A stretch of 64,000 nt of DNA from Lepidodermella squamata (GCA_047495785.1 JBLDXI010000010.1:2542001-2606000); one strand, 5' to 3'. Positions 2,252 to 7,223 are shown, counted from the first letter of the stretch. Translations and numbers: made by a program. The notes: generated from the letters alone by a model not told the origin.

Positions 2252-2275
2252 AAACTTACCTGGCACTGGGATGCT
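2252..2275 (+). ncRNA. U1: U1 snRNA gene, 5' fragment (nt 1-24), interrupted by retrotransposon
   Basis: AAACTTACCTGGCAC matches the U1 5' end including the 5'-splice-site-binding ACTTACCTG; GCAC pairs with GTGC in the 3' fragment (helix H). Confidence 0.85.
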
Positions 2276-2377
2276 TCTTCGTCTGAACATGATGGCCGTG
2301 ACGACGCTGATAGCGTTGTTTCTGATGAAGGTGCTGTTTTGGCGCCAGCGAGTGGCGCGAACAGGGGTGGGGATGCG

Positions 2378-3901
2378 ATGGTCGTTGACGGCGCGACCTC
2401 GGGCGGGGATGGCGCTGATGAAGGTGGTGACGCCGGCGACGGTTTCACTACCCAAGTTGGCAAAGTCTCAGCTCGAGAGCGCATCGTAATTATCGACGGC
2501 ATCTCGCCTCGGTTCAACTCGCTCGTTGACGTCATGCGCGAGCTCACAGCGGTCTCACCCGAGGCCAAGATCGCGAAGCCGTGGATTTGCCGCCGTGGTG
2601 CACTCGGGTTGATGTGTAAAGACGCCGCGACTGTTAAGATACTTCTCACGCGCAAAGGCTGGCCTGCGGCCGCGTTCGGCGGCAACGCCCGGCCGCATCG
2701 CCCGACGTCGTTTGATCACGAGGATTTTGATCCGGAAATTAAGAAGGCGTTAGAAGAATTGAAGCCGCGCGGCGAAGCTGCTGATCGCGCTGCTGCTCGT
2801 GCTCGCAAAGCTGATGAAGAATCTCGCAAAGCGATCTGCGTAAACTTTTTTCGTGGTGTTAGAGCTTGCGATATCCTAGGCGACTGGGGCGATATCGTAG
2901 ATGAAGTGTGGCCTGTTGGGAAAAAAGGCACCGTTTTTGGCGTGCTATGCAAGACCGAGGCTCAGGCTAAGGCTCTGATCCGCGATGGTCGCAGCTTCCT
3001 CGGCGTGCGAATTATTGCGCGACCTAAGCGTAAGCCCAAGTCGGTCGTCGTATGTGCGCGTTGCCAGGCGATTGGGCATAATGCGCGTGAGTGCAAAAAG
3101 GCGTTGGTGTGTTCTCGTTGCGGTGGTAGTGGCCATGAGGCTGCCAAGTGTGGTAGTACGACTGGTGTTAGGTGCAATAGGTGTAATGGTCAGCACACGG
3201 CGAACTACTACGGCTGCCCGATTATTCGCCAGCAGACCGACAAGCTCCGAAAAGAAGATGAAGAGCGCGCTCGGGCGATTCGCAACCGCAGCGCTGGTGA
3301 CGCTGCTCGCCGTCATGGCACGTCGTTTGCCGCCGCTGCCGGAGCAAGCTCGGCCGCCGGCCAACCCGCCGTTTCGCATCAGCCGGTCCCACCCGGGCCT
3401 GCCGATTTCCCGCCGATTCAGCCGCAACCGCCTGCCGCCGCGTCGAATTCGAGCCAAGCCGAAGTCGAGCAGTTACGAGCCCTCGTCGCTTCGCAGTCTG
3501 CTATGATTGTGCGCCTCGAAGCCATCGTGGCGGACCTGATGAAAGGTGTGCCGCCGCCTGCGCCTGCGTCTGCCCCGTTGATACAGCCGATTAGCGAGGT
3601 TGTCTATGAGCTGCCCGCTAACTTCGAAGACCGCCTCGTCGACCGCATCCTCGCTCGTCTGCAGCCGGCGATCATCGCTGCTGCTGGAGGCTATCGCCCA
3701 CGCTCGCCTACGCCGCCGACCAACAGCTCGCTGTCGGCCCCGATCGTCCTGCCTCGCGCCGACGTGCCGCCGCCGGCGATGCAGACCGACAACGTCGCGA
3801 GCAGCCTTTCGGCTGTGCTGCGCCCGTATGGCGTCGACATCTTAAGCCAGCCTGCTCTGCCAACTTCTGCCGCGCAATCCACCAATGTCCACCATGGCTA
3901 G
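2378..3901 (+). CDS. Retrotransposon ORF1 (gag-like nucleic-acid-binding protein); start uncertain
   Basis: Three zinc knuckles CARCQAIGHNAREC, CSRCGGSGHEAAKC, CNRCNGQHTANYYGC; coiled-coil and Pro-rich tail. First in-frame ATG inside the element is at 2378; the frame is open from the 5' junction. Confidence 0.85.
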   Translation: MVVDGATSGGDGADEGGDAGDGFTTQVGKVSARERIVIIDGISPRFNSLVDVMRELTAVSPEAKIAKPWICRRGALGLMCKDAATVKILLTRKGWPAAAFGGNARPHRPTSFDHEDFDPEIKKALEELKPRGEAADRAAARARKADEESRKAICVNFFRGVRACDILGDWGDIVDEVWPVGKKGTVFGVLCKTEAQAKALIRDGRSFLGVRIIARPKRKPKSVVVCARCQAIGHNARECKKALVCSRCGGSGHEAAKCGSTTGVRCNRCNGQHTANYYGCPIIRQQTDKLRKEDEERARAIRNRSAGDAARRHGTSFAAAAGASSAAGQPAVSHQPVPPGPADFPPIQPQPPAAASNSSQAEVEQLRALVASQSAMIVRLEAIVADLMKGVPPPAPASAPLIQPISEVVYELPANFEDRLVDRILARLQPAIIAAAGGYRPRSPTPPTNSSLSAPIVLPRADVPPPAMQTDNVASSLSAVLRPYGVDILSQPALPTSAAQSTNVHHG

Positions 3902-6821: not shown

Positions 6822-7078
6822 CCATGGTCAAAATTTGATAAGAAGTCCGGTCAAGAAGAGTTTTCGAATTATAGCTAAATAATGTGATAATATAGGCCTT
6901 GATGTAAATAATTAATCATCAATTTTTCTGCCAGTGTTGCACTTACGCCATTATGCACCCCGCAATTAGCGGGAATTTCGGCACGCCGAATATATTTTTT
7001 GCGACATTTAGATGTACACGAATCATCGTTATTTGTGGTTTACCCTCGGGTATTCGAATATTTTCACTTCCCAATAAA

Positions 7079-7223
7079 GATGCTCGTTCCTCGATCATGA
7101 AGGGGGCCGCCCCAGGGCGAGGCGGGCCATTGCACTGCGGTCCGCTGACCCCTGCGCTCTGCCTCATCGGCGGAGTCGGGTGCAAAATATTTCACTTGGG
7201 TAACGGCGTTCGCGCCACACCCG
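7079..7223 (+). ncRNA. U1: U1 snRNA gene, 3' portion (variant or pseudogenised)
   Basis: Loop I GATCATGAAG, CCCAGGGCGAGGC, loop II CCATTGCAC, GCTGACCCCTGCG, stem-loop III, terminal GGCG-TTCG-CGCC stem-loop IV. Rejoined length is 163 nt; the Sm site is atypical. Confidence 0.9.

What the first reader, a model, noticed from the sequence alone, without database searches (positions are those of the whole stretch)
2252..7223. Non-LTR retrotransposon with intact reading frames inserted into a U1 snRNA gene: candidate U1-targeting retroelement
Seen: the element (2276-7078) is flanked by GATGCT direct repeats. The left flank is the U1 5' end (AAACTTACCTGGCACTGG); the right flank is the rest of U1 (loop I GATCATGAAG, loop II ATTGCAC, SL4 with a UUCG loop). 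Removing the element and one repeat gives a 163-nt U1 in which GCAC from the left half pairs with GTGC from the right half, a covariant version of the human GCAG/CTGC helix H, so the halves belong to one gene. Both ORFs are uninterrupted, which suggests a recent insertion. Known: snRNA-targeting elements include U2-specific Keno (Tx1 clade) and Utopia (restriction-like endonuclease) and U1/U6/tRNA-specific Dada DNA transposons. ORF1 with three CCHC knuckles plus APE-RT is the I/Jockey/R1-group architecture, and I know of no U1-specific member of that group. Inference: hitting a 163-bp multicopy gene may reflect a sequence-specific endonuclease, but one copy cannot prove targeting.
Basis: partly seen in the sequence, partly recalled or inferred. 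Interest (0 to 1): 0.92.

Follow-up and report, generated by a model that had tools for sequence, protein, structure and literature searches.

The report
LINE retrotransposon landing in snRNA genes
An intact jumping gene (LINE) does split a U1 splicing-RNA gene here, but its few sister copies sit at one fixed spot in U2 genes, so it looks like a small-nuclear-RNA-gene lodger (mainly U2) of an enzyme type not reported for these sites, not a U1 specialist.

Summary
The insertion is real. An APE+RT LINE with two open frames splits a 160-nt U1 gene. All five 3' ends of the family in the assembly finish ...AATAAAGATGCTCGTTCCTC, so the element runs 2275-7092 and the right-hand GATGCT belongs to it. 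There is no duplication; the target lost 1-5 bp.

The family has very few copies:
- two full-length intact copies, one in U1 (window) and one in U2 (contig C19);
- a degraded copy with the same U2 junction (C36, tandemly duplicated);
- a 368-bp stump at a TC-rich site;
- three old ORF1 fragments.

The two intact copies differ mostly by synonymous changes (58 vs 15), so they come from separately evolving active lines. The U2 site (flank resumes at nt 30) is not the Keno/Utopia site (nt 39). ORF2 is not L1/Tx1-like and has no restriction-like nuclease.

Distant relatives in metagenome contigs sit at the splice donor of a spliced-leader-like gene that this genome also carries. This scan had already noted leader-gene- and U2-hitting LINE families elsewhere in this genome.

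Verdict: an snRNA-gene-dwelling LINE family, U2 first, with U1 a secondary or stray target. It is a new variant of a known kind. U1 specificity is not supported.

The parts
2070..2141 (+). tRNA gene about 110 nt upstream of the U1 start
   Evidence: RF00005, 55.2 bits
2176..2189 (+). Octamer/PSE-like promoter motif GCATATGCTAATCA, ending 62 nt before U1 +1
   Evidence: The same motif class (ATATGCTAAT / TATGCAAAT) lies 61-62 nt upstream of part of the intact genes scanned: 9 of 30 U1 and 3 of 12 U2 at up to 2 mismatches. It also lies upstream of the U2 gene that holds the C19 copy.
2252..2274 (+). U1 snRNA gene, nt 1-23 (AAACTTACCTGGCACTGGGATGC)
   Evidence: Identical to intact paralogs
2275..7092 (+). 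LINE (family A), sense to U1. The last 4 nt (7089-7092, CCTC) could equally be U1 nt 25-28 (microhomology).
   Evidence: Alignments to all other copies stop at 7092. A 17-nt end pattern is found 5 times in the genome. The first 88 nt are shared only with an 80%-identical relic on C33.
2378..3901 (+). ORF1, 507 aa counted from the first in-frame ATG. CCHC knuckles at 3053-3094, 3110-3151 and 3173-3217.
   Evidence: Translation and motif scan. No Pfam hit at E<=0.01. Weak nucleocapsid matches in the PDB. Atlas neighbours are arthropod LINE gag-like clusters, some with PRE_C2HC.
3885..6821 (+). ORF2, 978 aa. APE endonuclease aa 13-225 (3921-4559) and reverse transcriptase aa 540-805 (5502-6299), with YADD at aa 727. 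No RNase H and no C-terminal Cys-His motif. Overlaps ORF1 by 17 nt.
   Evidence: Pfam Exo_endo_phos 7.3e-13 and RVT_1 9.7e-30. Motifs N-E, GDLN, SDH and YADD.
6822..7092 (+). 3' UTR with AATAAA at 7073-7078 and a fixed 14-nt tail GATGCTCGTTCCTC (7079-7092). No poly(A) tail.
7093..7224 (+). U1 snRNA gene from loop I (GATCATGAAG) to the 3' end
   Evidence: RF00003, 63.1 bits for 7071-7224. Paralog alignment.

Best explanation
Window 2275-7092 is a young, apparently functional copy of a very low-copy APE-type LINE family with a Jockey-like layout. The family lives inside Sm-class snRNA genes.

Its recurrent landing site is U2, between nt 26 and nt 30, just upstream of the branch-point-recognition sequence. 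The window copy is a second kind of hit, in stem-loop I of U1 (nt 23 to nt 25-29).

Proposed mechanism:
1. The APE endonuclease nicks the bottom strand.
2. The RNA 3' end (...CGUUCCUC, 14 nt past AAUAAA, no A-tail) pairs with 2-4 nt of target (TC in U2, CCTC in U1, TC at the TC-rich site) and primes reverse transcription.
3. The second-strand break is almost opposite, so 1-5 bp of target are lost and no duplication forms.

Both full-length copies lie in sense orientation 23-27 nt downstream of the snRNA start, under an intact upstream promoter motif. The element is therefore most likely transcribed as a read-through of the host snRNA gene.

Shown: anatomy, copy census, junctions, purifying selection. 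Inferred: nick positions, priming by microhomology, co-transcription, and what the enzyme recognises.
For: - Domains and open frames.
- The assembly holds only five family 3' ends, all identical to 7092. Their flanks are U1 (window); U2 from nt 30 at C19 and at C36 (twice, tandem); and TCTCTC... at C1.
- The C19 copy has U2 nt 1-26 on its 5' side and the rest of U2 (121 bits) on its 3' side, in sense.
- Window vs C19 codon differences: ORF1 44 synonymous vs 13 non-synonymous, ORF2 14 vs 2. The window copy also reaches 88 nt further 5' than C19. The two are therefore independent insertions from lines under selection.
- U1 plus U2 genes cover about 16 kb of 121 Mb, so 3 of 4 junctions in them is not chance.
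- The intact-U1 form (left flank to 2274 + G + 7089 onward) is seen in read contigs and paralogs.
- A read-derived contig carries a further 3' junction absent from the assembly, which suggests insertion polymorphism.
- Relatives also use small-RNA genes. A 37%-identical poly(A) LINE sits in U2 at AAAG|TGTAG. Relatives at 33% identity lie at the donor of a spliced-leader-like gene in metagenome contigs, and this genome carries the same leader.
Against: - The sample is tiny: at most four independent junctions in the assembly.
- C19 and C36 could descend from one U2 insertion that was later duplicated as DNA. The C36 locus is heavily rearranged.
- One stump lies at a non-snRNA TC-rich site. A junction seen only in reads leads into a dispersed repeat of at least 42 copies. 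Specificity is therefore not strict.
- The U1 and U2 sites share little sequence beyond ATG...TC and a nearby GATCA.
- No RNA data were available to show co-transcription.
- No known self-cleaving ribozyme was found at the 5' end.
- Survival bias could add to the pattern, if insertions are tolerated and expressed only in multicopy snRNA genes.
Confidence: 0.62

Rival explanations
1. Targeting is by position, not sequence. The integration complex is drawn to the transcription machinery of Pol II snRNA-type genes (U1, U2, leader RNA) and inserts a set distance downstream of the promoter element.
For: Both full-length copies lie about 86-89 nt downstream of the same upstream motif and 23-27 nt from the transcript start, although the local U1 and U2 sequences differ. 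Relatives hit the leader gene about 30 nt into its transcript.
Against: The stump at the TC-rich site shows no such motif within the 6.5 kb fetched. Two U2 loci share an identical junction, which a sequence-specific nick explains equally well. Microhomology is present at every junction. No protein domain for tethering is evident.
Confidence: 0.15
2. Insertion is random, with survival bias. The element inserts anywhere, but only copies in dispensable multicopy genes with a strong promoter persist and spread.
For: Copy number is very low. One stump and one read-only junction lie outside snRNA genes. Compact genomes delete dead copies quickly.
Against: The identical nucleotide junction at two U2 loci. 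All orientations are sense. The target space is 0.01% of the genome. Relatives in other organisms and families are also found at fixed small-RNA gene sites.
Confidence: 0.12
3. One reading: a U1-specific retroelement, with the other copies as strays. One variant is that the 14-nt tail GATGCTCGTTCCTC derives from U1 (GATGC-G-CCTC) and guides the RNA to U1.
For: The tail matches U1 nt 19-28 at 9 of 10 positions apart from a 4-nt insert. The 5' junction also shares GATGC with U1.
Against: Only 1 of 5 family ends is in U1. The U2 junction recurs. No second U1 insertion of this family exists in the assembly.
Confidence: 0.06

Closest known systems
Keno (Tx1 clade; U2 snRNA gene-specific APE LINE of vertebrates, lancelet and hydra)
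   Same: It is an APE-encoding LINE inserted in sense in the 5' part of U2 genes, at low copy number.
   Different: - With Keno, U2 resumes at nt 39 (PMC4640811); here it resumes at nt 30.
- ORF2 here is 978 aa, with no C-terminal Cys-rich domain and no poly(A) tail.
- It matches human L1 ORF2p only weakly (37.7 bits, RT core only), so it is not of the L1/Tx1 group.
- This family also hits U1.
Utopia (restriction-like-endonuclease LINEs in U2 genes of oomycetes, amoebae and animals)
   Same: It is U2 gene-associated, low-copy, and often leaves no target-site duplication.
   Different: Utopia has a restriction-like nuclease after RT, and an RNase H in oomycetes. It uses the nt-39 site (PMC4640811). 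This element has an N-terminal APE domain and a different site.
NeSL-1, SLACS, CZAR, CRE (spliced-leader gene-specific LINEs)
   Same: Relatives of this element sit at the exon end of a spliced-leader-like gene (L061, L066).
   Different: Those families use a restriction-like endonuclease and belong to early-branching clades. This group is APE-type. The window family itself was not seen in a leader gene.
R1 and R2 of rDNA (co-transcription with the host gene; 3' end homology helps exact insertion)
   Same: It has a fixed non-poly(A) 3' end, junction microhomology, small target deletions, sense orientation in a transcribed multicopy RNA gene, and an ORF1 with three CCHC knuckles (as in R1).
   Different: The target is snRNA genes, not 28S rDNA. 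No C-terminal Cys-His motif is seen in ORF2. Clade membership was not testable here.
Dada-U1 (DNA transposons in U1 genes of zebrafish)
   Same: The target gene is U1.
   Different: Dada elements are DDE-transposase DNA transposons with 6-7 bp duplications (PMC8869645). This is a retrotransposon with no duplication.

Membership tests
APE-type non-LTR retrotransposon (LINE) | N-terminal apurinic-like endonuclease followed by reverse transcriptase in ORF2 | tested here: met
   Pfam Exo_endo_phos 7.3e-13 (aa 13-225) and RVT_1 9.7e-30 (aa 540-805). Catalytic-type motifs are present.
APE-type non-LTR retrotransposon (LINE) | Constant 3' end, variable or truncated 5' ends, no terminal repeats | tested here: met
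   Five identical 3' ends. The 5' ends fall at the equivalents of 2275, 2364, 3399 and 6725.
Keno / Tx1 clade | L1/Tx1-type ORF2: about 1200-1300 aa with a C-terminal Cys-rich domain, close to L1 RT (domain layout from my own knowledge) | tested here: not met
   ORF2 is 978 aa. Its last 200 aa hold 4 Cys and 5 His with no motif. L1 ORF2p scores only 37.7 bits and R2 scores higher.
Keno / Tx1 clade | U2 insertion site with the 3' flank starting at U2 nt 39 | tested here: not met
   The flank starts AAAGTGTAG, which is nt 30 of this genome's U2. The known site is given in PMC4640811.
Utopia | Restriction-like (PD..D/ExK) endonuclease downstream of RT | tested here: not met
   Only APE and RVT_1 domains were found, and ORF2 ends about 170 aa after RT.
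Jockey clade | APE-RT ORF2 without RNase H or a C-terminal zinc motif; ORF1 with three CCHC knuckles (from my own knowledge) | tested here: met
   Atlas neighbours are arthropod APE-RT clusters and gag-like clusters with PRE_C2HC (leads only).
Jockey clade | Poly(A) tail; placement inside Jockey in an RT phylogeny | tested here: inconclusive
   No A-tail in any of the 5 copies. An RT tree with labelled reference clades could not be built: no reference sequences were reachable, and the nearest proteins are all unnamed.
R1 clade | Cys-His motif after RT in ORF2; placement in an RT phylogeny (from my own knowledge) | tested here: inconclusive
   No motif was found by inspection. A phylogeny was not possible with these tools.
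   Only 1 of 5 family 3' ends is in U1.
Target-specific LINE of snRNA genes (general kind) | The same nucleotide junction at separate loci of a multicopy RNA gene | tested here: met
   The CGTTCCTC|AAAGTGTAGTATCTG junction occurs at C19 and at C36. Whether the two loci are independent events is not proven.

The most novel reading that the evidence does not exclude
A lineage of APE-type, Jockey-like LINEs specialises in Sm-class small-RNA genes and has moved between targets: from spliced-leader RNA genes (relatives) to U2 and then U1 (this family). It borrows each host gene's promoter. U1 would then be a genuine, recurrent target, making this the first LINE known to use U1 genes, and a natural series for studying how an APE endonuclease is re-aimed.
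Probability: 0.3. Interest if true: 0.78.

Novelty: new variant of a known kind. Interest (0 to 1): 0.6.

Why it matters
In the papers I could search, the LINEs reported to target snRNA genes are Keno (Tx1 clade, also with a U5-targeting member) and Utopia. Only a DNA transposon (Dada) is reported in U1. Leader-gene LINEs all carry a restriction-like nuclease.

This family is APE-type and not Tx1-like. It uses a new U2 position, has also landed in U1, and is related to elements at a leader-gene donor. Together these give a set of closely related enzymes with different, well-defined small targets. Such a set is useful for asking how APE endonucleases acquire sequence specificity, and how a parasite persists on a few dozen target genes.

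It also corrects the record for this locus: one U1 gene of at least 43 is inactivated, by an element whose usual home is U2.

Tried and rejected
- **Flanks of sister families.** Only coordinates could be used. One sister copy lies between 5.8S genes spaced 15,393 bp instead of the usual 8,460 bp.\n- **Exact-protein look-up of ORF2.** Not on record.\n- **Clade placement.** The PDB sequence search gives only R2 and L1 RT-core matches. The nearest proteins in two large searches are unnamed metagenome LINEs. The Atlas gives arthropod APE-RT clusters only. No labelled tree was possible.\n- **Rfam on eight foreign contigs.** No snRNA found. The leader-like flanks were recognised by eye and by a shared 30-nt leader instead.\n- **Reads.** One holder run, contigs only, no RNA run, so nothing on expression.\n- **5' ribozyme.** No Rfam ribozyme match in 2000-7500 at E<=1.\n- **GATGCT as a duplication.** Rejected.\n- **Shared recognition motif between the U1 and U2 sites.** Nothing convincing beyond ATG..TC and GATCA; two sites give no statistical power.\n- **U1-like bits upstream of the C33 relic** (GCTGGCACTAGG ... 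GCGCCTCAGATGC). Looked at but not significant by Rfam; left as a note.\n- **Structure and complex prediction.** Not run, because they would not change the verdict.

Full report
**What is at the locus**

The window lies at C10:2542001-2606000 of a 121-Mb, 151-contig animal genome. The best named protein matches for a neighbouring kinase gene reach only 47% identity.

In order along the + strand:
- a tRNA gene at 2070-2141;
- an octamer-like promoter motif at 2176-2189;
- the first 23 nt of U1 at 2252-2274;
- a 4.8-kb insert;
- from 7093, the rest of U1 (loop I GATCATGAAG, loop II, Sm site, and a terminal hairpin with a UUCG loop).

The insert has two open frames:
- ORF1 runs from the first in-frame ATG at 2378 to 3901. 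It has three CCHC knuckles.
- ORF2 (3885-6821, 978 aa) has an APE endonuclease and a reverse transcriptase. The usual catalytic motifs and YADD are present. It has no RNase H and no C-terminal Cys-His motif.

The genome has at least 42 intact 160-nt U1 genes. Aligned with them, the pre-insertion sequence at this site is GGGATGC-G-CCTC-GATCATG. A read-derived contig joins 2274 to 7089 with a single G between, which gives the same result. The two U1 pieces differ from paralog L016 at only 2 positions.

The family's 3' end was found five times in the assembly, by a 379-nt query and by a 17-nt pattern. All five read ...AATAAAGATGCTCGTTCCTC and then diverge. All alignments to the window stop at 7092.

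Three corrections follow:
- The element is 2275-7092.
- The right-hand GATGCT is element sequence.
- There is no target-site duplication. Between 1 nt (G) and 5 nt (GCCTC) of U1 were lost; the range reflects whether the terminal CCTC is counted as element or target.

**The family and where it lives**

| Copy | Place | State | 3' flank |
|---|---|---|---|
| 1 | Window (C10) | Full length | U1 |
| 2 | C19:1882090-1886818, minus strand | Full length, both frames open, 98.3% identical over 4729 nt | U2 from nt 30 |
| 3-4 | C36 | Degraded copy with internal deletions, inside a 5.4-kb unit duplicated in tandem | Same U2 junction, then a MITE |
| 5 | C1:2529138 | 368-bp stump | TCTCTCTCTCCC... |

- Copy 2 is preceded by U2 nt 1-26 and followed by U2 from nt 30 (AAAGTGTAGTATCTG...), which scores 121 bits on RF00004.
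- In copies 3-4, only 30 nt of U2 remain before a MITE interrupts it.
- Three old ORF1-region fragments also exist, at 80-91% identity, on C1, C2 and C33.

So of four distinct 3' junctions, two are the same U2 position and one is U1. U1 plus U2 genes make up about 16 kb of 121 Mb. The family is tied to snRNA genes, but chiefly to U2.

**Are the copies independent and alive?**

Window and C19 differ at 79 of 4729 positions. By codon, ORF1 has 44 synonymous and 13 non-synonymous differences, and ORF2 has 14 and 2. Such an excess of silent change means the two copies descend from lines that diverged while under selection for function. They are not DNA duplicates of one another.

The window copy also extends 88 nt further 5' than C19. 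That extra stretch is homologous to the C33 relic, so it cannot derive from the C19 copy.

C36-specific changes run at about 8 silent to 7 replacement, as expected for an older dead copy.

Contigs from the one public run that holds the element include a further 3' junction, CGTTCCTC|AAGAATCACCC.... It is absent from the assembly and leads into a dispersed repeat of at least 42 copies. This hints at insertion polymorphism and at imperfect specificity.

**Junction logic**

- In U2 (GGCTATG-A-TC-AAAGTG), the element replaces A, or ATC.
- In U1 (GGGATGC-G-CCTC-GATCA), it replaces G, or GCCTC.
- At the third site the flank begins TCTC.

Every junction thus allows 2-4 nt of pairing between the RNA's fixed 3' end (...CCUC) and the target. 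Both strand breaks are nearly opposite each other. This is the pattern of target-primed reverse transcription aided by terminal microhomology, as in R1-type elements (established knowledge). The nick positions themselves are inferred.

AATAAA lies 14 nt before the end and there is no A-tail in any copy.

Both full-length copies are in sense orientation, 23-27 nt from the snRNA start. An upstream motif of the class seen before some intact U1 and U2 genes is present at both. Read-through transcription from the host gene's promoter is the simplest way for the element to be expressed. This is inferred; no RNA run was available. No known ribozyme was found.

**Relatives**

ORF2 has many relatives in this genome at 52-61% and about 37% identity, most with open frames.
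- One 54% copy lies between two 5.8S genes spaced 15,393 bp instead of the usual 8,460 bp. Given typical rRNA gene lengths, that places it in or near the rDNA spacer.
- A 37% family member with a poly(A) tail is inserted in another U2 gene at AAAG|TGTAG, 4 nt downstream of family A's site.

Outside this genome the nearest proteins are unnamed metagenome LINEs.
- L061: a 33%-identical element with a poly(A) tail and a 9-bp duplication (GGTACGTAT) sits at ...TGTGTCTAAG|GTACGTAT.
- L066: two tandem elements are flanked by AAG|GTATGTAGTCGAC... and by intact leader-like genes.
- The same 30-nt leader (AACCATCTGCGAATTTGATTTGTGTCTAAG|GTATGT) occurs in this genome (L015). Its first 14 nt occur 46 times exactly, in clusters.

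The wider group therefore uses spliced-leader-like genes.

Earlier notes of this scan on other parts of this genome say the same: leader-gene-targeting LINE families that stray into U2 and U1. I checked that only in part, as described above.

**Comparison with known systems**

- Keno and Utopia resume U2 at nt 39 (PMC4640811). This family resumes at nt 30.
- Keno belongs to the Tx1 clade. This ORF2 is short, lacks a C-terminal zinc motif and poly(A), and matches L1 ORF2p only in the RT core at 37.7 bits. It is not Tx1-like.
- Utopia and the known leader-gene LINEs carry a restriction-like nuclease. This element has APE.
- As of the 2015 and 2022 papers read, the snRNA-targeting elements listed were Keno and Utopia (U2), a Tx1 family (U5), and Dada DNA transposons (U1, U6). 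I found no LINE reported in U1.
- The layout is Jockey-like. The clade could not be tested for lack of labelled reference sequences.

**Verdict**

This is a real, young LINE insertion in a U1 gene. U1 specificity and the proposed duplication are not supported. The best reading (about 0.6) is a low-copy, selectively maintained family that integrates into snRNA genes, with U2 nt 27-30 as its recurrent site and U1 as a secondary or stray site. It belongs to a group whose other members use leader-RNA genes.

That makes it a new variant of a known kind of target-specific LINE. It is of moderate to good interest, and the scan had already met its relatives elsewhere in this genome.

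Noticed in passing
window 1-64000 (e.g. 36500-45000 and 61400-63900): There are 66 tRNA genes in 64 kb, in arrays with near-identical duplicated blocks, some inverted.
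   Followed up: no
L057:3-1802 (G000:C2:1153500-1155301): A different LINE family (37% ORF2 identity) with a poly(A) tail is inserted in a U2 gene at AAAG|TGTAGTATC, 4 nt downstream of family A's U2 site. That site resembles the leader-gene donor TAAG|GTATGTATC.
   Followed up: partly
L015:1-56 (G000:C17:1749852-1749907, minus strand); 46 exact hits genome-wide: A spliced-leader-like gene start AACCATCTGCGAATTTGATTTGTGTCTAAG|GTATGT. The 14-mer occurs 46 times exactly, in clusters with about 680-bp spacing (e.g. C17:1137323-1142031). One cluster is interleaved with U1 genes on C17.
   Followed up: partly
L061:1-7568 and L066:1225-7153 (ENA metagenome contigs): Related LINEs lie at the exon end of the same leader-like gene in what must be related animals. 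In L066, two intact leader-like genes have GTTTG donors (GUU-type).
   Followed up: partly
read run X1, junction at window 7092: A contig continues past the element's end into AAGAATCACCCTCCCCACCTTTGGTGAAAA. This junction is not in the assembly, and the flank is a dispersed repeat of at least 42 copies and unknown nature.
   Followed up: partly
L054:5665-6050 (G000:C36:997164-997549): A roughly 390-bp MITE with terminal inverted repeats (CACTTTAACTGCCAAAAA ... TTTTTTGGCAGTTAAAG) cuts the U2 remnant at TTAA. It gave a weak MIR841 Rfam match.
   Followed up: no
G000:C22:30115-45660 and other rDNA contigs: The rDNA unit is 8,460 bp. A 54%-identical sister LINE (C22:36327-39215), antisense to the rRNA genes, enlarges one unit by 6.9 kb.
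   Followed up: partly
L058:5886-6000 (G000:C33, upstream of the 80% relic): The flank of the old relic contains U1-like snippets (GCTGGCACTAGG ... GCGCCTCAGATGC) and an ATATGCAA motif. It may be the trace of an older U1-associated insertion, or chance; there was no Rfam match.
   Followed up: partly
window 1967-2377: The ORF1 reading frame stays open upstream through the U1 5' piece and the tRNA-U1 spacer back to 1967. A short upstream ATG lies inside U1 (2271), in another frame. This is probably chance.
   Followed up: no
G000 U2 list: C15:3241397, C3:1133965, C42:728423: Three further U2 matches score only 100-122 bits, like the two LINE-disrupted U2 genes. They may also be interrupted near the 5' end.
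   Followed up: no
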